DNA of 64,000 nt, taken from the NCBI GenBank assembly GCA_976226885.1, contig OZ320316.1:28520001-28584000 (forward strand), given 5' to 3'. A program made the translations under genes and the position numbers. The notes beneath the pieces were generated by a model. The model saw only the letters and a program-made list of their open reading frames with translations. It ran no database searches and was not told where the DNA came from. The number at the start of each line of letters is the position of its first letter. Within the stretch, counting starts at the first letter, position 1. This document shows positions 3,635 to 49,200 of this stretch, one piece after another. The stretch is from Iphione sp. A-MEVVRFRX5. Taxonomy: Eukaryota.

Positions 3635-5320
3635 ATGGACTTCAACGACATCCCAAATTTTGAGATCGAGCTCGATTTATGCACTCAAGCAGATCAATTG
3701 GAAAAAGAATATTTCTCTCAGAGTCAGCAGTCCAATCAGGAAGATGATGATCAGTCTTCAAGATTTGCACCAGTGCAATCAGAGCACGAATTTAAGGCAA
3801 TTTTAGCTTCAAGAATTCCAAAAAACACTCAGCAATCGTCCAACTGGGCCCACAATATGTATAGAGAGTGGAGGACCTGGAGGAACGGTCACAGCAAATC
3901 ACATTTCGACAAGAATTGGCCAGTTCCTGCACTTACCACTGACAAGCTTGACTTACTGGACTACTGGTTGGCACGCTTCGTGACAGAAATCAGGAAGCAA
4001 GATCACGAGGACTATCCTCCAGGTGGGTTCATTTTCATCACTTTTTATATAAACCAAGTGGGGTGGGGGACCCTTAACGCTCTGAAAATTGAATGTATGT
4101 ATCATATTATTTCAGGTACACTCACCAACATAGCCGCCTCGATCCAGAGGTATATGAGGGATGTCCTGGGTCGTGCTGATATCTGGCTACTTAAGAAAGA
4201 TCAACCCCAATTCAAGATGTTCCGCGATGCATTGGACGCCCGGCGTAAGGTCCTCATTGCTCAAGGCATAGGCGCTCACACCAATCGTGCTGATCCCATA
4301 TCAATTGACGATGAAACAGAACTCTGGGAGAGTGGGGTGATCGGATTCCATTCAGCGCAGGCTCTGTCATATGCGTGCTATCTGTACAATTGTAAAATCT
4401 TCGGGTTCAGGGCCCGCGATGAACATGCTAACCTTGTTGTCGAGCAATTTTCCTTTGGAAGGGAGCGTGACGGTTCAGAGTTTCTGCAGTTTAATGGACG
4501 TCTTGCAAAGACAATTACTGGAAAACTCAACTCCAAATGTAATCCTAGGTTGGTGAAGCATTATGGCCAGCCCCACAATGAAAGGTGCTTGGTCAAGTTA
4601 TTTAGGAAGTATTTGGATTGTGTACCCAAATCAGGCCGATTCTACCGCCGTCCGTTAGCAAACGTCAACAATCAAGTAGTTTTCAGTGTTCAGCACGTAG
4701 GGGTGAACAAATTGTCACAATACATGACCAGCATGTTTCAAGCAGCAGGGATCGATATGGAAGGCCGCAATATTAGTGGCCATAGTGGTAAGGTTGCATG
4801 TTGTACGACTCTTTACGAGCGGCAATTTGATGAACAAGCCATTACCTCGCGTAGTGGACATCGCTCTAATGCTGTACGCTTGTACAAGAGACCTTCCCTG
4901 GACCTTGAGAAACGTATAAGCGATTCACTCCAGCCCCCACCACCCAAAACAGCAAAAACATGCACGGTCACCAAATCCACAGAACTCAATGACGTACAAC
5001 ACACCCCAATGCAGCCCAAACCCTCAACCTCTACAGCAGCGCACTCCACTCCCCTACAAACCCCCAAGTCAAATTCACCCCCCCCCCCAGTAATGCCAGT
5101 GAGCCCGATCACCCCGTACACGTCACACGAATCCCTTGGCCACAATTCTTCAAACACCCCACCTACACACACTTCCACAGACCAAGTAGTCTCCCCAGCA
5201 CAGGGCACCCTTCACCTAGCGTCCTTGATTGATACAAAAATGTTTACAGTCGTGGTCCCAAGTGACGTTTTCCAAGTCGCCATTCTCAAGGATGGAAAGA
5301 AAGTAGTCGTTCAGATCTAA
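3635..5320 (+). CDS. Crypton-type tyrosine recombinase (DUF3504 / KCTD1-ZMYM-QRICH1-like), probably with one stop-free intron at 4023-4115 (about 530 aa after splicing)
   Basis: Motifs IPKNTQQSSNWA, LDYWLARFVTEIRK..DYPP, FGFRARDEH (catalytic R), GHSGK (HxxR position), GHRS and VRLYKR (catalytic Y). Removing GT(4023)..TTTCAG(4115), 93 nt, gives DYPPGTLTNI, matching the family YPPxTL motif. Pro/Ser/Thr-rich C-terminal tail. Confidence 0.85.
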   Translation: MDFNDIPNFEIELDLCTQADQLEKEYFSQSQQSNQEDDDQSSRFAPVQSEHEFKAILASRIPKNTQQSSNWAHNMYREWRTWRNGHSKSHFDKNWPVPALTTDKLDLLDYWLARFVTEIRKQDHEDYPPGGFIFITFYINQVGWGTLNALKIECMYHIISGTLTNIAASIQRYMRDVLGRADIWLLKKDQPQFKMFRDALDARRKVLIAQGIGAHTNRADPISIDDETELWESGVIGFHSAQALSYACYLYNCKIFGFRARDEHANLVVEQFSFGRERDGSEFLQFNGRLAKTITGKLNSKCNPRLVKHYGQPHNERCLVKLFRKYLDCVPKSGRFYRRPLANVNNQVVFSVQHVGVNKLSQYMTSMFQAAGIDMEGRNISGHSGKVACCTTLYERQFDEQAITSRSGHRSNAVRLYKRPSLDLEKRISDSLQPPPPKTAKTCTVTKSTELNDVQHTPMQPKPSTSTAAHSTPLQTPKSNSPPPPVMPVSPITPYTSHESLGHNSSNTPPTHTSTDQVVSPAQGTLHLASLIDTKMFTVVVPSDVFQVAILKDGKKVVVQI

Positions 5321-26692: not shown

Positions 26693-26852
26693 TATTCTTT
26701 TGGTCTTTGGAAGAAATACTGAAATTCTTGATCAGGTGGAGGGCAGTGTAAAATAATGTATTATCTTAATATGTAATTGCTGCTATGCAGTTGTATTCTC
26801 TATATTTGTTTGTCATGTCATTTATCTTGATGAAATCCAGCCCGAAAGTACA

Positions 26853-26946
26853 AGTAGTGTAGTAGGAGTGACCCTTAGACACGAATTCCGATGTCACATG
26901 ACCACATTCCAATGTCACATGATCTATGACGTCACAGTCACATGAC
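26853..26946 (+). repeat. Polinton left terminal inverted repeat
   Basis: Matches the reverse complement of 47993-48086 with 5 mismatches in 94 bp. Confidence 0.95.
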
Positions 26947-27654
26947 CATACGGAATATCCCATATGTGGGAAGGGGGAGAGGCAATAACGAGATCAAACA
27001 CTCCATAGATAGGGGTGGAAGGTAGGTAAGAGAGACCGTGTATATGTCAAGTGCACACCATGATAAGAAGATTACGTGTGTTATATAGATATCAGCAACA
27101 CTGTTTCTAGACTAGCTAGAGCTTAATGCTTGGTATCATCTAAAAGCCCTTGACGAGACCTTTCCAACGTGCTATTATACAACCTTCTATCACTAATATC
27201 AGACCTTCAAACAGCATTCACAACATAGCATACCTTTTCAACCTAGCCATGACTGAGAATACAAAAAAGAGACAATGAAGAAATAAAGGATCGATATATG
27301 GAATGAAATCTATTCAAGGTAGTATTACTCACCAAGTATTTACACTATAATACGATGTGTAGCCTATGATGGTATACGAATACTAAAATGTATCGAAATC
27401 AAAACTACATTACATATCGTCTCGTCTTTCTGATAACCAGAAGGTCATATAAGGAACGTTAATGACAAGGTAAATAGCAACGTCAAGTGAGTAGACATGG
27501 AGTAAATAGTTGGTGAGATGAACCAGACAAGTCCAAAGAGGGTTATACAATAAAAACCATCAAAATATATCTAAAAAGAATGATGATATGAGCGTATACA
27601 CACACACACACACAGAACAAACGAGAGAACACCACCAAGAGAATATCAGTTGAA

Positions 27655-28069: not shown

Positions 28070-31000
28070 CAGCAATGACGACAGTAGTGGATATGGAGCG
28101 CAACAGTCAAGCAATGAGGATGATGAGGATGAGGATGACGAGGATGATGAGGATGAGGATGAGGATGGATTAAGAGCTGAAAGTATAATGATACAAAGTG
28201 AAGTAAGTCACAAAATAAAGTCATTAAGTACAATCCAATATTTATTTCATAATAAAGACAAGATCACACGTTACATATAGATTAAGTAGATGGTCATTTC
28301 GAGATAATTGATTGTATATATATATATAGAATGAATAAATGTTAATAGATAGCATATATGTAGAATCAAGATATAGAATAGACGAGTAATAGATTGTCGA
28401 GGTAAAATAAAAAAAATCAATATATATAATATGTAGCCCAGTTTGTTTTTTCTGGTTTGATTTGGTCTTTCGTTTTTCTTCCCCGGCGGTTACAGCAAAC
28501 AGGTGCAGGTGCGATAGATGATCGGGCAACACCATCACGACCACCACCATCAGCAGCACGAGGAGTAGTAGCAACACCATCAACATCTAGAACTCCAGCA
28601 CCATCATCATCATCATCATATGGTAGGTCGGATACAGCAGTTGCCAGCACTAGTGGAGTCAACACCGGAAGGAAGAAGAGGAAAAGGACCGTCACACATC
28701 CTGTAGAAGTAAGAAAAGAGATCATGAATATATAGCCGTATATAATATAAACAAAACAGATATTAAAAAATCTCAAGTACATATTTTTATCATCATCATA
28801 TTATTATTATGATCCTTTGTTTTTGTTTACATTTTTTAGAATATAGAAGTAGCAGGAGCAGCAGCAGCAGGAGCAGCAGAATCATGCCCGTATTGCAAGA
28901 GAACATTCAAGTACAAGACGGCCATGTCAAAACATGCAGCAGGATGTAAAGAAAAAATGAAATTACGATGTGAAGTATGTCAGAGGAGGTTTAACACAGT
29001 GAGCCAGAAAAAAACACATATGAGCAGGTTTCATAAGAAGAAGAGGCCCACATCATTCAAATGCAGAAAATGCAATGTCATAGTGAATTCAAAGAGGGAA
29101 TTATACCTCCACGATGGTGAACAACACGGTGGAGGAAACGATGAAGAAGAACTTCAACGTCCACCATGGACACCAGGAAATGAGCCATGGGCGAGAATGG
29201 GTACGGAAGAGGCAAGAGAGTTCGAAAGGACATATAATGCAAACAGGAGACATATCCTAGCTCGTCACAGGTTCGGTGATATATCAGCGACTTACAATTT
29301 CCCCACAAACAACTTGGCAGACGGTGGAGTGGAATTCGAGAGACACATGGACGAAATATACAGAAATGAGCAGAGAGCATTCAAGGTAAATGTCGGTTTT
29401 GGTTCGATGCTATGTCATGTCGAGTCTATTCAATTTAGATATTTTGTCCCCTATGGAAACAACAGTGTGTTCACGGAACCCATGTTTGTGTCGAGACGGG
29501 AAGATGTAGACAACGTGGTGTCGAGACTGAAGAGCATAGACCCAGAGAAATATTTCTTGGAGGACAGACCAGATACGAAATGGGGGTCTGAAGGGGTGAT
29601 GAACGTAGTGTACTTTGTATGGCACACATCTTATCCATTGGGAAGAGGAGGAGGATTTCTACCGAGATTCCTGAAGGGCAGACCATACTTGATCACGTTA
29701 GACCATCACATCGACGGAAGTGCATTGACAGACGAACTGTGTGCTTTCAGATGCTTGGCATTACTCGACAGAGAGCATCATAGATTAGAAGAGAAGTCTG
29801 AGGAATACTATCATCAATGGAGAGTCTTCATGGCAAGAAAACATGGCATGACACTCCCACTCGAAGCAAGAGACTACGAAGGTGTGGAGAGCAATCAACT
29901 CTGCGATCTGGAAGAATGCTTCAGCGTGAGCATATATGTGTACGAATTGACCAAGGAGGAGACAGTAATCATACGACATAAACCATTTCACAAATTCACC
30001 AAAACCATGCACTTAAATGTGTATCAGGGACACTTATCTTTCATCACAGACTTTGAACAGTATGCTCAAAAGTTCGAGTGTGTATTATGCAGGCGTTGCT
30101 TTAAACGAAGATTCAACATAATACGCCACATGAAGGTGTGTCCACTGAGGACATCATATACTTACAAAGGTGGGTACTACTCGAACCCACAAACATTGTT
30201 TGAAGAGATGGAGACGATAGGTGTGAACGTACCTCATCAAGACAGGTTATACAAAGATTTTGCCGTCTTTGATTGCGAGGCCATGTTAAGGGCGATGCCG
30301 GAAGGTGAGTGCCCCAAGTTGAAATGGATAAGAAAACACGAAGTGATATCAGTCGCAGTATGTAGTAACGTTCCCGGATTCGAACAACCAGAATGTTTTG
30401 TGTCAGAAGATATAGAAGAATTGATGGATGAGATGGTAACTTACCTAGGGAGAATACAAGCAGCAGCTCTTGTTAGAGCAAAAGAGAAATGGGAAGATGC
30501 ATTAGCCGAGTTAGACAGAATGATTGTTTCAGAGCGGGAGCATGCATCCGCAGGACCCGTCGTCGTCGAAACGAGCAACACGAACAACATAGACATGGAT
30601 GGCAGAGAAGAGGAAGATGAGGAAGAAGAAGAAGAGGAAGAGGAAGAGGAAGAAGATGAAGGAAAAGGAGATCCACACATGCGAATGCTGAAGCGACTAG
30701 TTAAGATAGCACAGAGGTTCACACACTACATCAGTGCCCTACCTGTATTGGGTTTCAATTCAGGTAAATATGATCTGAATGTGTTGAAAGGAGCGCTCCT
30801 CAGGCGGCTGAAAAAACAAGAAGATGATGAAGACGACGATGATGAAGATGAAGAAAAGGAATTATTTGTGATCAAACGTGGAAATACATATGTAACAGTG
30901 GATAACAAAAAATTGAAATTCCTCGATATCTCTCAGTATTTAACCCCGGGGGTATCTTATGCCAAATTTCTGAAAGCGTACGACGTGCAAGTCGAGAAGG

Positions 31001-33743
31001 GCATATTCTGTTATGAATACTTAGACGGTCCAGAGAGACTAGCGGAGACACGGCTACCGGACCATGAAGCCTTCTACTCGTCGCTGAAGGGTAGTAACAT
31101 AACGAGAGACGAGTACGAAGAGCTTCAGAGAACATGGATAAGGGAGGACATGCATTCACTTCGGGACTTGTTAGTCTACTACAACAAGTTAGACGTCAGA
31201 CCGTTCGTGGAAGGTGTTAGCCGGCTACAAAAGTTCTACTTCGAGCGGGGTATGGACATATTCAAGGTAGCGGTGTCTGCCCCTGGAGTGGCGAGGAGAT
31301 TACTGTTCCAGTCCGCCCTGAGTGGTGGCGCAAGATTCCCAACGTTTGGCACAAAAGAGGAAGACATGTACCAGACGTTTAGAAAGAACATCGTGGGAGG
31401 TCCAGCCATCGTATTCACAAGGGCACACGAGAAAGGTGTGACAAACATCCGAGATTCGAGGAACAAATGCCAGTCCATCATCGGGTTAGACGCAAATTCC
31501 CTTTACCTGTGCTGCATCGGGAAACCGCATGCCACGGGCACGTACGTGAGGAGGAGGGCCAACACGGGATTCAGACGGGAGAAAGCTCCACTGTCCATCA
31601 CAAGCGTGATATGGTTGGAATGGGAAGCGAAGACGAGGTCCATCACCATCACACATGCCCAGAACAGGTTCGAGGGAGAAGTGTGGGTAGGTCCATACAG
31701 AGTGGACGGCATCGCACTCGCCACAAGAACAGTGTTCGAGTTCAATGGATGCTACTATCATGGCCACCAGTGTCTGAAAGGAAAGACAAGAGAAGCAGAG
31801 AGAAAGAGACGAGAGAGACGCACAAAAGTAAGAAGAAAGTACATCGAGAGTCGAGGATACTCACTAGTGGCCATGGAAGAATGCCGCTTCGAAAGCATGT
31901 TGAAGGAGAACGAAGAACTCAGAGAACACGCCGAAAGATACACTCCCACATTCAGTGCCACTCACAGAGGAAAAGTAACAGAGCAACAGATCATGGAAGG
32001 CGTATGCGACGGATCTCTATTTGGGGCAGTAGAAGTAGACATACGAGTTCCAGAGAGATGGCCACCGGGAATGGAACGTGACAAGAGTCCCTCTGTCTAC
32101 TTTGGAGAGATGTGTCCTCTCTTCGGGAACACCTCGGTCAGTTTCGACCACATAGGAGAACACATGAAACAGCACGTGAGACAGCAGCGCATGTCTCAGA
32201 GACCGAGAAGGTTACTGGTCGGTGTCATGAGCGCCAAGAAGACCCTGATCATGACACCGCTTTTAAAGTGGTACGTCGAACACGGTCTCGTTGTCACAAA
32301 AGTATACCAGACGATCGAGTTCATCCCCCGAGAATGCTTCAAGAGCTTTGTCGACGACGTGACGGAAGCGAGAAGAAGGGGTGACTGCGACACAGACATG
32401 ACCATCATCGCAGACACCATGAAGTTGATCGGGAACTCTGCATATGGAGGCATCATCATGCAGAAAGAAAAACAACACGCGGTGAATTATTACACGAGCC
32501 CGAACCAAGCGGTGATGGCGGTGAACTCTCCACGATTCAGACAAGTGACAGAATTGAAAGGTCTGTACAAAGTGGAGATGGCCAAACCGAGAATAACACT
32601 GGACATGCCTGTGTATGTGGGGTTCTCGATACTCCAATACGCGAAATTGATCATGTTGTCGTTCTATTACGACTGTGTCGACAGGTTGATGGACCAATCC
32701 AAGTTCGAATACGTGACAATGGACACAGACAGCGCCTATATCGCACTGGCCAGTCCTTCGATCACAGGAGCAATGACGGAAGAAGGCAAGCGCACATACG
32801 AAAGAGACACACTGGACAACTGTGCCGACAACAAGCAACCCACCTGGTTCATGAGGGAGTGTTGTGCCACGCACAGAAGATACGATCGCCGCGTTCCGGG
32901 TATTATGAAGGAAGAAGCGAAGGGTGAGAAGATCATTGCATTAACCAGCAAGACATACATCATGGTCAACAGAGACACGGAACCTCTCACCATAAAGATG
33001 AGTTGTAAAGGTATATCGAAAGCTCTCGTGACAGATCCAGAACAAACATATGAGAGTGTGCTGGCAACGCGACAGAGTAGAACGGGTAGAAACACAGGAT
33101 TCAGAGCATGGTCAGGAACAGTGTGCACGTACGAGCTAGTGAGGCAAGGATTTACCTACTTCTATGCAAAACGAAGAGTGCACGACGACGGTGTGCACAC
33201 TTCACCTTTAGAACTGACACTCTGTCCCTGGGAAGACGGTGCCGGGGACTATGATATCATCATCAACCATCCGTGGCACGTATTGAGTCCCACATACAAA
33301 TGTGTTATGGGAGATGGATTCTTGTTGGCGGAGCACATGTTTCTCTACAAGATGGCAATGTACCATGGAGAAGACGACGTGGCAGAGGCAATCAAACGGA
33401 GTGTGGACAGAACAGAATACAGAGCGTACGCCGAGATGGTGGTGAAAGGAAACGAATGGAAAGGTGGAGCTCAATTTACGGCCATGACTGAAGTGACCAG
33501 GATAAAGTCGAGAGCTTTAGGAGTGATTGCAACATCGGCTCTGAACCACACGAAACTCATTGTCTATGCAAACAGAGATAAATATTGGGGGGTGGGAATG
33601 GACGAGGCGATGGTGATGATATCTACCCCAGAAGAATTCAGGGGGAGGAACAGACTGGGTGAGATCTGGGACGACATCAGACGTGAATTGAACAGCAGCA
33701 GCAGCACCACCAGCGACAGTAGGAGCATCAGCATCATTAGCTG

Positions 33744-33744
<1 letters not shown>
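27655..33744 (+). CDS. polB: Protein-primed family B DNA polymerase with C2H2 fingers, Vsr-like insertion and C-terminal NADAR domain; predicted exons 27655-27876, 27978-28202, 28496-28708, 28840-33744 (about 1854 aa)
   Basis: Exo I VFDCEA, Exo II GFNSGKYD, Exo III YNKLDV, Pol A GLDANSLY, Pol B KLIGNSAYG, Pol C MDTDS, end motif YAKRRVHDDGVHTSPL. Three GT-AG phase-0 introns join the upstream ORFs in frame. The core ORF is certain; the splicing is predicted. Confidence 0.93.
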
Positions 33745-33778
<34 letters not shown>

Positions 33779-33779
<1 letters not shown>

Positions 33780-34420
33780 TGGAAATAGTGATTCCGGAAT
33801 ACACCTTTGCTACTCCCTCCACCATCGTAGTGAGTGGGGCCACGTCTTCGGGCAAGACGCGTTTCGTGATACAGCTAATCAAGAACAGGCGAGTGTTATT
33901 ACAGCACCCAGTACCAGAGAGGATAGTCTATTGTTATGGCGTGTGGCAGAATGGGTTCGAAGACCTGGTGGGTGAAGTCGAGTTTCGTGAAGGCGCCAAC
34001 GTCGATGACATCAAACATCCAGGAGGCACATTACTCATTATAGATGACCTCATGGATGATGTAGTGCAAAATGATAAGGTTCGCAACTTGTTTACACGTG
34101 GTTCACATCACGATCGGATTACTGTTATCTACATTAATCAGAACCTCTTCTGTCAGGGTAAGTGCGCTAGGTCGATTGCCCTGAACTCGCAGTACATGGT
34201 TCTGTTTAGAAACCCACGTGACATTCAACAGATTGCACGTCTGGGTAGTCAACTGGGCATGCCGGAAGTGAAGTCAGCATATATAGACGCGACCAAAGAA
34301 CCTTACGGATGCTTGGTGATCGATCTTCACCCCTCCAACAACACGGAAGTGAAATTGACTAGTCATATTTTTGGTGAAGAAGAAGAAGACCACCACCCTC
34401 TCGTCTGGTACAAACAGTGA
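33779..34420 (+). CDS. A32/FtsK-like DNA packaging ATPase
   Basis: Walker A GATSSGKT, Walker B LLIIDDL, FTRGSHHDRITVIYINQNLF. Confidence 0.95.
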
Positions 34421-34422
34421 TC

Positions 34423-34440
34423 ATGTCATCATCGTCATCA

Positions 34441-34472
<32 letters not shown>

Positions 34473-35055
34473 GTCCGCACCGTCTTGTTTGAGAGAGCAT
34501 GCCAGTTTTATCCGCCTCTTACTCACCAGTCCTAGTCGTATCCAGATCGAGGCACTTTTCGACACGGCAACCACGGGTCAGCTGGATGCCCTCGCTGAGA
34601 TCGTTCACAATTTACTAGTACTCCCAGTAAGAGAAGAAGTCAGGCAATACGCTATAAAGAGGCGGAGGCTCTTGTCCAGACTGGTGAGTAACAAGGTGTC
34701 ACATAGAACGAAAGCAGCACTCGTCAGCAAACACTACCGCCAGTTACTGCACCTACTCAGGGCTGTAGAGGACGAGCTGTGGAATCTGACAGAAGGTGCG
34801 TCNNNNNNNNNNNNNNNNNNNNNNNNNNNNNNNNNNNNNNNNNNNNNNNNNNNNNNNNNNNNNNNNNNNNNNNNNNNNNNNNNNNNNNNNNNNNNNNNNN
34901 NNNNNNNNNNNNNNNNNNNNNNNNNNNNNNNNNNNNNNNATGCAGCCGGTCCACCACCACCTCCTCCACCACCGGCAGCAGGAGCAGCAGCAGGAGGAGC
35001 AGCAGCACTACTACCACTACTACCAGCATATTTTTCACCAGCACTGGCAGCATGA
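34423..35055 (+). CDS. Conserved Polinton small protein downstream of the ATPase (interrupted by the N gap)
   Basis: Helical ATTGQLDALAEIVHNLL..LLSRL segment of the kind seen after Polinton ATPases; hydrophobic GG..LLPLLP C-terminus; stop overlaps the next ATG (ATGA, 35052-55). Frame across the gap is uncertain. Confidence 0.65.
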
Positions 35056-35429
35056 GAAAACTAATATGTATACCTCAAGAGCGATATCAGGTTCTAGTAC
35101 GACATGGGGTTGAAAAAGAAGAAGAAGAAGAAAAATTAGTAACAACACCACCAGGGAATGACAACAACAACAACAACGGCAGAAGCGAAGCGGAGGGGGG
35201 TGCCATTGCGAGCGGCAGTGTGAGTGGTGGCGGCGGCGGCGGCGGTGGCGGCGGCAGCGTGAGCGGTGGCGGCAGTGGCGTGAGCGGCAGTGGCAGTGGA
35301 ATAAACACATCAATGCGAAGAAGGAGAAGGAAAAGGAGTGTCACACCACCACCACCTGGCATACCTGTAGAGAAGAAGAAAAAGAAGAAAAAACTACTCG
35401 ATTGGACTGAGGGATGGACAAGTATTTAA
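35052..35429 (+). CDS. Small Gly-rich, basic Polinton protein upstream of integrase (125 aa)
   Basis: MRKLICIPQERYQVL..PPPPGIP..KKKK..W; overlaps the integrase start. Confidence 0.65.
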   Translation: MRKLICIPQERYQVLVRHGVEKEEEEEKLVTTPPGNDNNNNNGRSEAEGGAIASGSVSGGGGGGGGGGSVSGGGSGVSGSGSGINTSMRRRRRKRSVTPPPPGIPVEKKKKKKKLLDWTEGWTSI

Positions 35430-36556
35430 CTCGGATCTACTACGACCCGCGTCATCCCGCTGCATTTGGAGGTGCCCGTCAACTGTACAAGCACTCCAGG
35501 GCGGCCGGACGACCGTATACCCTACGACAGGTGAAGGAATGGTTGCGTGGTCAGGAGACTTACACACTCTTTGCTCCTTCTCGTACTAGTGCCGCTTTGA
35601 AGCGACCTCGTGTGATTGTGTCAGACAAATTCGACCAGTTTGACGCAGACACAGCCAACATGAACGAATGGCGTGATTCTAACAAAGGAATGGGCTATTT
35701 CCTTGTTGTGATTGATATTTTCACGAGGTATGCATGGACCAGTCCATTGAAGAACCTATCGGCTAAAGACACACTGTCCGCTCTTCGTTCTGTGATGGCT
35801 GACCAGAAGTGTCGGGTGTTACGCACGGATGGTGGAAGTGAATTCAATAACCGGTGGGTTGCTAGCTATTTGAAACAGACACATATTAAGCATGTTGTCA
35901 CTAGAAATGAAGTCAAAGCTAATTATGCCGAACGCCTAATCAAGACACTCAAAACACGCCTCATGCGAGACATGTACCACCGTCAGTCACGGGAGTGGGT
36001 GAGTCGCCTTGCACACTTCACAGAGGCGTATAACCACCGTCGCCATCGCTCGATCGGTACTACGCCAGCTCTTGCCGCCTCTGACGACACCGACAAGGTT
36101 GAGTTGTGGCAACGACAGTACGGACGTCTCCCACCTACACCACCTACCACTAGTGGAAGAAGAAGAATAATAATACCCTATCGGTTAGAAGTGGGAGACG
36201 TCGTCCGTTTGGCTCGCTTTCGACGTCCTTTCAGTCGGGCTTATGATGAACAGTGGACACATGAACTTTTTGTTGTTGTAGCCCGTAGATGTCAGCAAGG
36301 TATACCCCAATATACCATCAAGTCGTGGAATAACGAAGAGATCGATGGCCGTTTCTATGAGGAGGAGTTGATCAAGGTCCGAGTGAACGACCAGACAACC
36401 TACAAGATCCAGAAGGTCTTACGTAAGAAAAAAGTGGACGGGGTCAACGGCTATGTTGTGCACTGGCTCGGTTGGCCCAGTCAGTACGACTCGTGGATCA
36501 GTGCAGATCAGATGCGCTCCATCGGTGCTCCTCTTTCTCCTTCACCTGTTGATTAA
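35414..36556 (+). CDS. int: Retroviral-like (c-)integrase with C-terminal chromodomain
   Basis: D (FDADTANM), LVVIDIFTRY, D (RTDGGSEF), E (NYAERLIKTLK); chromodomain YKIQKVL..YVVHWLGWPSQYDSWI. Confidence 0.95.
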   Translation: MDKYLTRIYYDPRHPAAFGGARQLYKHSRAAGRPYTLRQVKEWLRGQETYTLFAPSRTSAALKRPRVIVSDKFDQFDADTANMNEWRDSNKGMGYFLVVIDIFTRYAWTSPLKNLSAKDTLSALRSVMADQKCRVLRTDGGSEFNNRWVASYLKQTHIKHVVTRNEVKANYAERLIKTLKTRLMRDMYHRQSREWVSRLAHFTEAYNHRRHRSIGTTPALAASDDTDKVELWQRQYGRLPPTPPTTSGRRRIIIPYRLEVGDVVRLARFRRPFSRAYDEQWTHELFVVVARRCQQGIPQYTIKSWNNEEIDGRFYEEELIKVRVNDQTTYKIQKVLRKKKVDGVNGYVVHWLGWPSQYDSWISADQMRSIGAPLSPSPVD

Positions 36557-48102: not shown

Positions 48103-49200
48103 TGGTCCGTCAGAGCAGTAGTTGGAGCCCTCTCTGTTTGGTGCTGAGTAATAATCACCTCAAGAAAAGGAAGAACCTGTTGTTAGGACTCTTGTTTTAC
48201 AAACTGCCAGTGAAGTATAAGGACCACAAACAAAACTGACATTCTACATGGTACATATCACACAGATTCCTTTACTGTCAGACAGTGCATGTGTGAAATG
48301 GGACAATGAGAGGAGTTTGCAAGACAATAATCAAAGAGAGTGTTGATGATGAGATAACAAATCTCTGCCTGGAGATAAAGAAAACAATGGGAATGATACT
48401 GGTAAAGGTGAAGTTAGATAATGAGTTGGTAGAACTGCCTTAGTCATGGACCAAGGTCCCAACCCAAAGCACTACTGAAGGAAATTAAGGCTAATTTATA
48501 AGAGATGGAATAGGATGATTCCTTGAAAAACGTGACAAACTAACTGATTGAGTCAGTCAGATGGCTGTATTAGCAGGACAACGGGAAAACAAACATTTTC
48601 CTGGATTTGACTATCATTAACACAGCCATAAAACAATCTACCCGATGAAGATAGTTGAACAAGTCATGAGCAAGCTAAATGGCATATTTTATTGATTAGG
48701 GCCAACAGTTGACCAGAAATTATTCTCTACTAATAATCCTCTAGACAAACTGGTGGGATAGTGGCCATGACAATGGTGAGAACACAATATAGACCATTTG
48801 AAACAACATTCTTGAGATTAGCCCCACATGGTGTCCATTGTGCGATAAGTGCACACAGGCCACAAAAATACACAGACACAACATGTATGCCTTCTATGGA
48901 CAAGAGTGTGGACCTGTGAGGTCTACTACCCCCAACCCTCAAGTGGCAATCAAGCAACTCTGAGTGGGAGGCACTCTTTACTTGATCACACCTCTCATGG
49001 GCAGACTATATTGGTGAGTGTGAGTGCATTGTCAGACCTAGAAATCTGTATACAAGGTATGTATGCTGGTGAACATGTTAGCAAAAGAATAAAATTGGCA
49101 TAATTTCACCTTTAAATAATTGAATTACTACCAAAATTACCAAGTGCCATGGATCTATACACATAAGTATCATACATCAAAATCAATTTATTTGATTTAA
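48103..49200 (+). pseudogene. Decayed Gypsy PBS, gag and protease region, continuing from the LTR split by the Polinton
   Basis: PBS-like TGGTCCGTCAGAGCAG at 48103; degenerate zinc knuckle CDKC..GH near 48840; protease-like VSALSD near 49025; heavy decay. Confidence 0.4.

What the first reader, a model, noticed from the sequence alone, without database searches (positions are those of the whole stretch)
33250..33690. NADAR (YbiA-like) domain fused to the C-terminus of a Polinton DNA polymerase
Seen: the pPolB ORF continues past its usual end (YAKRRVHDDGVHTSPLEL) for about 150 aa with the NADAR pattern LSPTYKC..AEHMFLYKMA..AEAI..M..IK..RDKYWGVG..RGRNRLGEIWDDIRREL. Established: NADAR enzymes hydrolyse N-glycosidic bonds; bacterial NADARs remove DarT1-type ADP-ribose from guanine in ssDNA; animals have guanine-specific DNA ADP-ribosyltransferases (pierisins, clam CARP-1). 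Inference: an eraser tethered to a strand-displacing viral polymerase could clear guanine-ADP-ribose from the template, acting as a counter-defence against a host DNA ADP-ribosylation system. Caveat: the Glu usually found in the E-A-x-x-D-x-x-W-G motif appears replaced (VYANRDKYWG), so the domain may bind only or have shifted specificity. I am not aware of this fusion being described, but could not search.
Basis: partly seen in the sequence, partly recalled or inferred. Interest (0 to 1): 0.9.

Follow-up and report, generated by a model that had tools for sequence, protein, structure and literature searches.

The report
Polinton DNA polymerase with NADAR tail
A virus-like mobile element carries a DNA polymerase whose last 150 residues form a real NADAR (ADP-ribose-removing) domain; related elements of marine invertebrates share this fusion, but every copy lacks the key catalytic glutamate, so the domain probably binds rather than cleaves.

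Summary
One uninterrupted ORF (28924-33744, +, 1606 aa) joins a protein-primed family B DNA polymerase to a C-terminal NADAR domain (aa ~1445-1590). The domain passes Pfam's threshold. A profile of it and its relatives matches the solved NADAR structures 8BAU and 2B3W, and its AlphaFold model (pLDDT 90) matches only those two folds.

The ORF lies in a ~21 kb element with 102-nt terminal inverted repeats, a weak A32-like ATPase match and an rve-chromodomain integrase.

The fusion is not a one-off. Of 121 related polymerases, 16 carry a full NADAR tail, including the window's four closest relatives, and 27 carry a degenerate tail of similar length. The named relatives come from bivalves, abalone, a sea cucumber and an anemone. 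Tail and polymerase diverge together (r = 0.78), which points to vertical inheritance.

The catalytic glutamate (E125 of 8BAU) is absent in all 16: Tyr in 12, Phe in 2. The essential lysine (K50) is Met in the window.

A non-canonical, probably non-hydrolytic binding module is more likely.

I found no paper describing this fusion. I rate it a new variant of a known kind, interest 0.6.

The parts
28924..33744 (+). pPolB-NADAR gene: one uninterrupted ORF of 1606 aa (0 stops, 0 frameshifts)
28966..29127 (+). N-terminal C2H2 zinc fingers of the polymerase (aa 15-68); a further finger lies at aa 384-404 (30073-30135)
   Evidence: Pfam matches below the curated cut-offs; the family profile A2 matches solved C2H2 finger proteins at E 1e-16
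30898..31539 (+). Part of the polymerase matched by Pfam DNA_pol_B_2 (aa 659-872)
   Evidence: E 6.3e-07, 29.1 bits against a cut-off of 25.8
31921..33228 (+). Polymerase palm, fingers and thumb (aa 1000-1435). The motifs K-x3-NS-x-YG (aa 1167-1175), DTDS (aa 1267-1270) and K-T-Y (aa 1343-1345) are read directly from the translation.
   Evidence: AlphaFold model pLDDT 86.9; Foldseek matches phi29 DNA polymerase 2ex3_A and 2pyj_A at probability 1.00
33229..33255 (+). Short linker between the polymerase end and the NADAR domain (aa 1436-1444); aa 1439-1441 have pLDDT below 50
   Evidence: tail-less relatives end here
33256..33693 (+). NADAR-fold domain (aa 1445-1590). Positions in 8BAU numbering: E43 = E1470, K50 = M1477 (with K1476 just before), W89 = W1512, E125 = Y1548, D130 = D1552, W133 = W1555; the G-x-N-x-x-G motif is at aa 1574-1579.
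33694..33741 (+). Ser/Thr-rich C-terminal end (aa 1591-1606), not conserved in relatives
26848..26949 (.). Left terminal inverted repeat of the element
   Evidence: 102 nt, 93% complementary to 47990-48091; read
47990..48091 (.). Right terminal inverted repeat of the element
33779..34420 (+). ORF of 213 aa directly after the polymerase; possible A32-like packaging ATPase (weak match only)
   Evidence: Pox_A32 E 0.033, 14.1 bits against a cut-off of 22.8
35414..36556 (+). Integrase: rve core plus a C-terminal chromodomain, 380 aa, uninterrupted
   Evidence: rve E 8.3e-09 (36.1 against 32.6); Chromo E 1.1e-05 (25.7 against 25.1)

Best explanation
The last ~150 residues of this Polinton protein-primed DNA polymerase are a true NADAR-fold domain. 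It was fused to the polymerase long ago and has been inherited vertically in a lineage of elements of marine invertebrates. A short flexible linker ties it to the end of the thumb.

Its fold-defining residues and part of the ADP-ribose pocket are kept (Trp1512, Asp1552, Trp1555, Glu1470). The catalytic Glu is an aromatic residue (Tyr1548; Tyr or Phe across the clade), and the phosphate-binding Lys is Met1477.

The most likely reading is that the domain no longer works as a canonical ADP-ribosyl N-glycohydrolase. Instead it serves the polymerase as a ligand- or nucleic-acid-binding module, or as a structural one, descended from an eraser that was probably acquired as a counter-measure to ADP-ribosylation. 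For example, it could recognise ADP-ribosyl or nucleotide moieties on or near the template.

Shown: the domain's identity, the fusion, its conservation, the state of the active site and the co-divergence with the polymerase. Inferred: loss of hydrolysis, the binding role and the ancestral function.
For: Identity of the domain:
- Pfam NADAR is above the curated threshold.
- A profile of the tail and its relatives matches 8bau_A at 1.4e-30 and 2b3w_A at 4.4e-25.
- The AlphaFold model has pLDDT 90.4 and pTM 0.82, and only 8BAU (TM 0.66) and 2B3W (TM 0.63) match it in the PDB.

Fusion and conservation:
- 33 cluster representatives align across polymerase and tail in one piece, four of them full length at 27-45% identity.
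- Of 121 relatives, 16 have a full NADAR tail, 18 a partial match and 9 a 106-133 aa tail with no match.
- Pairwise identities of tail and polymerase core co-vary: r 0.78, with 0 of 5000 Mantel permutations reaching it. The tail evolves faster (mean 26.6% against 45.6%).

Active site:
- In the 16 full tails the Glu125 column holds Tyr 12, Phe 2, Val 1, gap 1. Among 116 other NADAR hits it is Glu in 72%.
- Other columns in the 16: K50 is Lys in 7, E43 is Glu in 8, D130 is Asp in 12, W133 is Trp in 10. The fold motifs (the Lys of helix 4 and G-x-N-x-x-G) are kept in 15-16 of 16.
- Tyr and Phe alternate, so the hydroxyl is not required; this fits stacking rather than catalysis.
- Mutagenesis in the literature: E167Q and E167D abolish activity in SCO5665 (PMC12945103). 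K95 and D171 are essential in E. coli C7 NADAR (PMC11543638).

Linker: pLDDT is below 50 at aa 1439-1441.
Against: Nothing here measures binding or activity. All four NADAR families tested so far remove guanine-ADP-ribose, including the phage type with His in place of Glu (PMC12945103), so the family tolerates change at this position and a Tyr variant has never been tested. The window's own subclade of five keeps Glu43 (5/5), Trp89 (5/5) and Asp130 (5/5), which is more order than a dead site would need. The residue equivalences rest on profile alignment, not on a superposition I could inspect. Some of the fragment proteins counted may come from decaying copies. The net charge of the fused domains does not differ from that of free NADARs, so nothing specifically points to DNA binding.
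Confidence: 0.45

Rival explanations
1. Active tethered eraser. The NADAR domain still hydrolyses ADP-ribose from guanine or cytosine in single-stranded template DNA exposed during strand-displacement replication. It would use a non-canonical catalytic arrangement (Glu1470, Asp1552, Tyr1548) and so protect the element from host DNA ADP-ribosyltransferases.
For: The NADAR fold and part of the pocket are kept. All NADAR families tested remove G-ADPr, including the His variant of phage T4, and phages use NADARs against DarTG1 (PMC12945103). CARP-1 homologues are concentrated in Bivalvia, and also occur in Cnidaria and Porifera; these are the same animal groups as the named relatives of this polymerase. 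PolB is the step at which T-even phages escape DarTG (PMC11348598). NADAR domains sit next to the replicase in +RNA viruses of invertebrates (PMC9503650; Foldseek viral hits).
Against: None of the 16 fused domains has Glu, Asp or His at the catalytic position. The window lacks Lys50. E43 and K50 vary even among intact full-length ORFs. Glu-to-Gln and Glu-to-Asp changes, and loss of the Lys, abolish activity in the tested enzymes. One subclade has let the tail diverge beyond recognition. The host of this window is not known, and no ART gene could be looked for.
Confidence: 0.28
2. Purely structural appendage. The NADAR fold is kept only as a scaffold, for example as a docking surface for the terminal protein, the integrase, the packaging machinery or a host factor, or as an extension of the thumb. 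Any small-molecule pocket is irrelevant.
For: The tail evolves faster than the polymerase core. Pocket positions are relaxed while core positions are kept. In one subclade the tail keeps its length (120-132 aa) but loses most similarity to the NADAR profile.
Against: Trp89, Asp130 and Trp133, which contact ADP-ribose in 8BAU, are still the commonest residues at their positions (12, 12 and 10 of 16). The low-confidence linker and the pTM of 0.71 give no sign of a rigid interface with the polymerase.
Confidence: 0.17
3. Neutral relic or chance read-through. The tail has no function and persists only because the copies are young.
For: The NADAR segment is the least conserved globular part of the protein. 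Most relatives (78 of 121) do without it.
Against: It is retained, without breaks, in intact ORFs whose polymerase cores are only 32-56% identical to the window's. Fold motifs are kept in 15-16 of 16. It co-diverges with the polymerase. The confident fold prediction is not what a drifting sequence would give.
Confidence: 0.05

Closest known systems
[quoted passage not shown] 2022 (PMC9503650)
   Same: A NADAR domain is covalently joined to the viral replicase in viruses of invertebrates. My model matches such polyproteins in the viral fold library: nido-like viruses, yellow head virus and gill-associated virus.
   Different: Those are RNA-dependent RNA polymerase polyproteins. Here the partner is a protein-primed DNA polymerase of an integrating DNA element. 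The survey states that outside RNA-virus polyproteins viral NADARs are typically standalone, and it does not mention polintons. I did not examine the active sites of the RNA-virus domains.
Phage NADAR (T4 type), a counter-defence against DarTG1
   Same: A viral NADAR that deals with ADP-ribosylated DNA. It also has a non-Glu residue at the catalytic position.
   Different: The phage protein is free-standing, has His at that position and is shown to be active. Here the domain is fused to the polymerase, has Tyr or Phe there and is untested.
Phytophthora nicotianae NADAR (PDB 8BAU) and E. coli YbiA (PDB 2B3W)
   Same: Best sequence-profile matches (1.4e-30 and 4.4e-25) and best fold matches (TM 0.66 and 0.63). 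The equivalents of Trp89, Asp130, Trp133 and Glu43 are present in the window.
   Different: They are free-standing enzymes with Glu125 and Lys50. The window has Tyr1548 and Met1477.
DarG1 (BC4488-type) NADAR antitoxins of DarTG1
   Different: DarG1 has Asp at the catalytic position, a conserved extra Lys (K115), an N-terminal basic extension and an adjacent DarT1 gene. None of these is seen here.
Other polymerase fusions in polinton-like elements (SF1 helicase-pPolB of Oxyrrhis marina PLV; pPolB-helicase of Tetrahymena Tlr1), PMC12721341
   Same: An accessory domain fused to pPolB, used there as a lineage marker.
   Different: The partner there is a helicase, which is replication machinery. 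No NADAR or other ADP-ribose-processing domain is reported.
Macrodomains in the replicase polyproteins of coronaviruses, alphaviruses and hepeviruses
   Same: An ADP-ribose-processing fold attached to a viral replicase; in animal RNA viruses it is largely mutually exclusive with NADAR (PMC9503650).
   Different: An unrelated fold, RNA viruses, and protein ADP-ribosylation as the target.

Membership tests
NADAR superfamily (Pfam PF08719) | Sequence match to the family profile above the curated threshold | tested here: met
   40.1 bits against 35.1 for the whole ORF; 44.8 bits for the tail alone. TIGR02464 gives E 2.8e-10 but is below its equivalog cut-off.
NADAR superfamily (Pfam PF08719) | The alpha-helical core fold of solved NADARs | tested here: met
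   AlphaFold pLDDT 90.4. Foldseek finds only 8BAU and 2B3W, both at probability 1.00. The same result holds for the domain within the 607-aa model.
NADAR superfamily (Pfam PF08719) | Conserved core motifs: the Trp89 equivalent, the helix-4 Lys, W-G-x-G and G-x-N-x-x-G | tested here: met
   W1512, K1528, W1555-G-V-G and G1574/N1576/G1579
NADAR superfamily (Pfam PF08719) | Catalytic acid or His at the position of Glu125 (8BAU), Glu167 (SCO5665), Asp171 (DarG1) or the phage His | tested here: not met
   Tyr1548 in the window; 0 of 16 fused relatives have Glu, Asp or His. The residue is essential in mutagenesis.
NADAR superfamily (Pfam PF08719) | Phosphate-binding Lys (K50 of 8BAU, K95 of E. coli C7) | tested here: not met
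   Met1477, with Lys1476 one residue earlier; Lys is kept in 7 of 16 fused relatives
NADAR superfamily (Pfam PF08719) | Hydrolysis of an ADP-ribosyl N-glycosidic bond | not testable with these tools
   No activity can be measured here
Protein-primed family B DNA polymerase (pPolB) | Profile match and polymerase motifs | tested here: met
   Pfam DNA_pol_B_2 at 29.1 bits against 25.8. The motifs K-x3-NS-x-YG, DTDS and K-T-Y are in the translation.
Protein-primed family B DNA polymerase (pPolB) | Fold similarity to phi29-type polymerase | tested here: met
   Foldseek 2ex3_A (phi29 polymerase with terminal protein) and 2pyj_A at probability 1.00, about 405 aligned columns. Sequence searches of the PDB found no polymerase.
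Protein-primed family B DNA polymerase (pPolB) | A terminal protein for priming | not tested
   None identified. The conserved N-terminal 440 aa are uncharacterised.
Polinton / Maverick element | pPolB together with an rve-family integrase | tested here: met
Polinton / Maverick element | Terminal inverted repeats | tested here: met
   102 nt, 93% complementary, 21.2 kb apart
Polinton / Maverick element | Target-site duplication flanking the repeats | tested here: inconclusive
   The 12 nt on either side show no clear duplication
Polinton / Maverick element | Packaging ATPase, capsid proteins and maturation protease | tested here: inconclusive
   Only a weak Pox_A32 match (E 0.033). Pfam and PHROGs give nothing for the other ORFs. 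A 137-nt run of N at 34803-34939 hides part of the element.
DarTG1-type NADAR antitoxin | Asp at the catalytic position, the conserved extra Lys, an N-terminal basic extension and a neighbouring DarT1 | tested here: not met
   Tyr at the catalytic position. The only PDB chains matched are 8BAU and YbiA. No ART domain appears in the Pfam scans of the element's ORFs.

The most novel reading that the evidence does not exclude
The fused domain is an active DNA de-ADP-ribosylase with a catalytic arrangement not seen before (an aromatic residue in place of the Glu, Asp or His). It travels with the replicase of an integrating DNA virus-like element of marine invertebrates and clears adducts laid down by host CARP-1/pierisin-type enzymes. 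That would mean DNA base ADP-ribosylation acts as an anti-viral or anti-transposon defence in animals, mirroring DarTG and phage NADAR in bacteria.
Probability: 0.2. Interest if true: 0.85.

Novelty: new variant of a known kind. Interest (0 to 1): 0.6.

Why it matters
NADAR domains are known as free-standing proteins of phages and giant viruses and as parts of RNA-virus replicase polyproteins. I found no report of one fused to a DNA polymerase or present in a Polinton.

The fusion marks an old lineage of invertebrate Polintons and is a handy marker for classifying them.

It also connects three previously separate observations: DNA polymerases are the step blocked by ADP-ribosylated templates; viruses carry NADARs as counter-defence; and bivalves and cnidarians, the hosts of the named relatives, are the animals rich in CARP-1-type DNA ADP-ribosyltransferases.

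The uniform loss of the catalytic Glu makes this a natural case for asking what a NADAR fold does once it stops being, or changes how it is, a hydrolase.

Tried and rejected
- Word-indexed protein searches with the tail, both inside the full protein and alone, found nothing. Only the exhaustive HMMER search found relatives.
- phmmer of the tail and of the polymerase part against PDB sequences found nothing. Profiles were needed.
- tblastn of the ORF against phage records found no match.
- Rfam and tRNA scans of the window gave nothing that could place the host.
- PHROGs and Pfam gave no names for the other ORFs of the element.
- I considered the idea that Tyr1548 might be a priming residue, making the domain a built-in terminal protein. 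I rejected it because Phe alternates with Tyr in that column.
- I tested the idea that the fused domain is unusually basic and therefore DNA-binding. It is not supported: mean net charge is +2.1 against +2.5 for free NADARs.
- P0002, which scored well, is a repeat protein with FctA domains, not a NADAR.
- The founding paper on NADAR (de Souza and Aravind 2012) and the 2015 review could not be read. An earlier mention of the fusion there cannot be excluded.
Full report
**1. What is in the sequence**

The window holds one uninterrupted ORF at 28924..33744 on the + strand, 1606 aa long. At its base composition, the chance of 1606 codons without a stop is about 1e-41.

Pfam places these domains on it:
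- NADAR (PF08719) at aa 1466-1589, E 5.9e-10, 40.1 bits against a curated cut-off of 35.1.
- DNA_pol_B_2 at aa 659-872, 29.1 bits against 25.8.
- C2H2 zinc fingers at aa 15-68 and 384-404, below their cut-offs.

The tail alone (window:33190-33741) scores 44.8 bits for NADAR. It also matches TIGR02464 at 2.8e-10, below that model's equivalog cut-off. The window has only this one NADAR and one polymerase.

**2. The tail is a NADAR domain**

A profile of the tail with 49 relatives (A1) matches two solved NADARs: Phytophthora nicotianae NADAR (8bau_A, E 1.4e-30) and E. coli YbiA (2b3w_A, E 4.4e-25). The only other match was a de novo designed TIM barrel at E 0.0079, which I take as chance.

The AlphaFold model of the tail has mean pLDDT 90.4 and pTM 0.82. 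Against the PDB, Foldseek returns only 8BAU (TM 0.66) and 2B3W (TM 0.63) with probability 1.00. The next hit has E near 1.

In the viral fold library the model matches NADAR proteins of phages and giant viruses. It also matches pieces of replicase polyproteins of invertebrate RNA viruses: nido-like viruses, yellow head virus and gill-associated virus.

**3. The rest of the protein is a protein-primed polymerase**

The motifs K-x3-NS-x-YG, DTDS and K-T-Y are in the translation. A model of aa 1000-1606 built on alignment A2 has pLDDT 86.9 and pTM 0.71. Besides 8BAU, it matches phi29 DNA polymerase (2ex3_A, bound to its terminal protein, and 2pyj_A) at probability 1.00.

In that model only aa 1439-1441, and the Ser-rich last 12 residues, fall below pLDDT 50. 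The two parts are therefore joined by a short flexible linker.

**4. The element**

Inverted repeats of 102 nt, 93% complementary, lie at 26848-26949 and 47990-48091, so the element is about 21.2 kb. I saw no clear target-site duplication.

Downstream of the polymerase lie:
- a 213-aa ORF with a weak Pox_A32 ATPase match (E 0.033), at 33779-34420;
- an uninterrupted 380-aa rve integrase with a chromodomain, at 35414-36556.

A run of 137 N at 34803-34939 lies inside the element. I did not try to fill it, and the two ORFs listed across it cannot be judged. Capsid and protease genes were not recognised by Pfam or PHROGs.

Count of breaks in the recognisable genes: polymerase-NADAR 0, integrase 0, putative ATPase none seen. 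The state of the remaining genes is undetermined.

**5. The fusion is shared**

The exhaustive HMMER search with the tail gave 176 hits at E up to 1e-3. Of the listed proteins, 33 align with the window ORF across both the polymerase part and the tail in a single piece. Four are full length: P0001, P0032, P0120 and P0052, of 1539-1721 aa and 27-45% identical. All nine that I scanned carry a Pfam NADAR match at the C-terminus, five of them above the curated cut-off of 35.1 bits and four just below it at 29.5-33.5 bits.

A second search, with the polymerase core (aa 651-1422), gave 275 hits. The named ones come from bivalves (Pinctada, Solemya, Tegillarca, Argopecten, Pecten), an abalone (Haliotis), a sea cucumber (Apostichopus) and a sea anemone (Exaiptasia).

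Among 121 proteins with a near-complete core:
- 16 have a full NADAR tail;
- 18 have a partial match;
- 9 have a tail of 106-133 aa with no match;
- 78 have no tail.

The window's four closest relatives (P0156, P0157, P0158 and P0001; 50-56% identical in the core) all have the full tail.

In a rough neighbour-joining tree, the NADAR-bearing proteins fill several basal branches and one large clade. Part of that clade keeps a 120-132 aa tail that has mostly lost similarity to the profile.

Among the 16 full tails, pairwise identity in the tail tracks that in the core: r 0.78, with 0 of 5000 Mantel permutations reaching it. The tail evolves faster (mean 26.6% against 45.6%). This fits one old fusion that was inherited vertically and then lost or degraded in some lineages. 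The tree is too crude to exclude several gains.

**6. The active site**

Two papers define the catalytic residues.

In PMC11543638, ADP-ribose in 8BAU is held by K50, R79, W89, R93, W133 and D130, with E43 and E125 on the distal ribose. In E. coli C7 NADAR, K95 (= K50) and D171 (structurally = E125) are essential. For E88 (= E43), the Gln mutant is inactive, while the Ala mutant loses only a little activity in vitro but fails to rescue cells from the toxin.

In PMC12945103, E167Q and E167D abolish activity in SCO5665. The position holds Glu in the NADAR and YbiA families, Asp in DarG1 and His in phage NADARs, and all of these families remove guanine-ADP-ribose.

By profile alignment, the window has E43 = Glu1470, K50 = Met1477 (with Lys1476 before it), W89 = Trp1512, E125 = Tyr1548, D130 = Asp1552 and W133 = Trp1555.

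In the 16 full fused tails:

| Column (8BAU numbering) | Residues in the 16 fused tails |
|---|---|
| E125 | Tyr 12, Phe 2, Val 1, gap 1 (no Glu, Asp or His) |
| K50 | Lys 7 |
| E43 | Glu 8 |
| D130 | Asp 12 |
| W133 | Trp 10 |
| Helix-4 Lys, G-x-N-x-x-G | kept in 15-16 |

Among 116 other NADAR hits the E125 column is Glu in 72%, E43 is Glu in 88% and W133 is Trp in 97%. The fused clade therefore keeps the fold and relaxes or re-tunes the pocket, and the aromatic substitution is ancestral to it. Because Phe alternates with Tyr, the hydroxyl is not what is selected.

**7. Interpretation**

The counter-defence idea has real contextual support:
- viral NADARs do counter DNA ADP-ribosylation in phages;
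- the polymerase is where T-even phages escape DarTG;
- NADARs sit beside replicases in invertebrate RNA viruses;
- CARP-1 homologues are concentrated in the same animal groups as the named relatives of this polymerase.

However, the residues that the tested enzymes need are missing. My ranking is:
- a non-canonical, probably non-hydrolytic binding module descended from an eraser: 0.45;
- an active eraser with a new catalytic arrangement: 0.28;
- a purely structural appendage: 0.17;
- a relic: 0.05.

**8. Novelty**

No paper in the held library combines NADAR or YbiA with polinton, and the hits with maverick are author names. The broad survey of viral NAD/ADP-ribose systems lists NADAR in phages, giant viruses and RNA viruses. 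It says viral NADARs outside RNA-virus polyproteins are typically standalone.

One fragment (P0017) was auto-named by JGI as a YbiA/DUF1768 protein, so pipelines have seen the domain. The founding NADAR paper could not be read. I rate the finding a new variant of a known kind.

**9. Limits and slips**

- After one search showed that the named relatives come from animals, I fetched no DNA of related elements and did not look up the window's own contig. As a result there is no dN/dS, no synteny and no host identification.
-, made before that, was a protein-cluster look-up of search hits. It returned metadata and five further member proteins (P0151-P0155), which entered the "other" counts and were excluded.
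- One search failed because I gave coordinates that contained stops. I corrected it.
- The alignment tools printed consensus lines on their own.
- The profiles built in scripts are HMMs, not sequences. Conservation is reported as counts by column only.

Noticed in passing
window 31735-31773 (aa 938-950) and about 60 aa around it: The polymerase carries an insert between its exonuclease and polymerase parts that resembles the Vsr very-short-patch-repair endonuclease. The family profile A2 matches 1vsr, 1cw0 and 1odg at E ~3e-4, and JGI names one relative (P0205) a G:T-mismatch endonuclease.
   Followed up: partly
window 28924-30240 (aa 1-440): There is a long N-terminal extension with C2H2 zinc fingers, followed by a ~330-aa domain. 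That domain is as conserved as the polymerase core (48% identity to P0001; 16% of its columns invariant in five proteins) and has no family match. It could be the terminal protein, but this is untested.
   Followed up: partly
window ~30580-30860 (aa 553-645): Two runs of Glu/Asp-rich low-complexity sequence lie inside the exonuclease region. Their length varies between relatives.
   Followed up: no
window 42308-44770 (+): An 820-aa open frame rich in Ser, Thr, Pro and Ala, with Thr and Ala runs and no family match. It coincides with a strong negative GC and AT skew. It is unclear whether this is a real gene.
   Followed up: partly
window 34803-34939: A run of 137 N lies inside the element, between the putative ATPase and the integrase. 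The ORFs listed at 34417-35055 and 34779-35429 run across it and cannot be judged.
   Followed up: yes
window 3635-5320 (+): A 561-aa ORF with DUF3504 (E 1.4e-16) and a weak phage-integrase match. It is probably a Crypton-type tyrosine-recombinase element or a gene derived from one, and is unrelated to the Polinton.
   Followed up: no
window 35414-36556 (+): The element's integrase ends in a chromodomain (Pfam Chromo 25.7 bits against 25.1), which suggests chromatin-targeted integration.
   Followed up: no
relatives P0208-P0255 (proteins only): One subclade of the polymerase family keeps a C-terminal tail of 120-132 aa in which only 20-45% of the NADAR profile is still recognisable, or none of it. 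The domain seems to be diverging out of the family while keeping its length.
   Followed up: partly
proteins P0004, P0016, P0013: These very large proteins consist of several NADAR domains in tandem: 7 in 4240 aa, 3 to 6 (depending on the profile used) in 1580 aa and 2 in 1185 aa. Their source and function are unknown.
   Followed up: no
window 26836-26847 and 48092-48103: There is no clear target-site duplication next to the terminal inverted repeats.
   Followed up: partly
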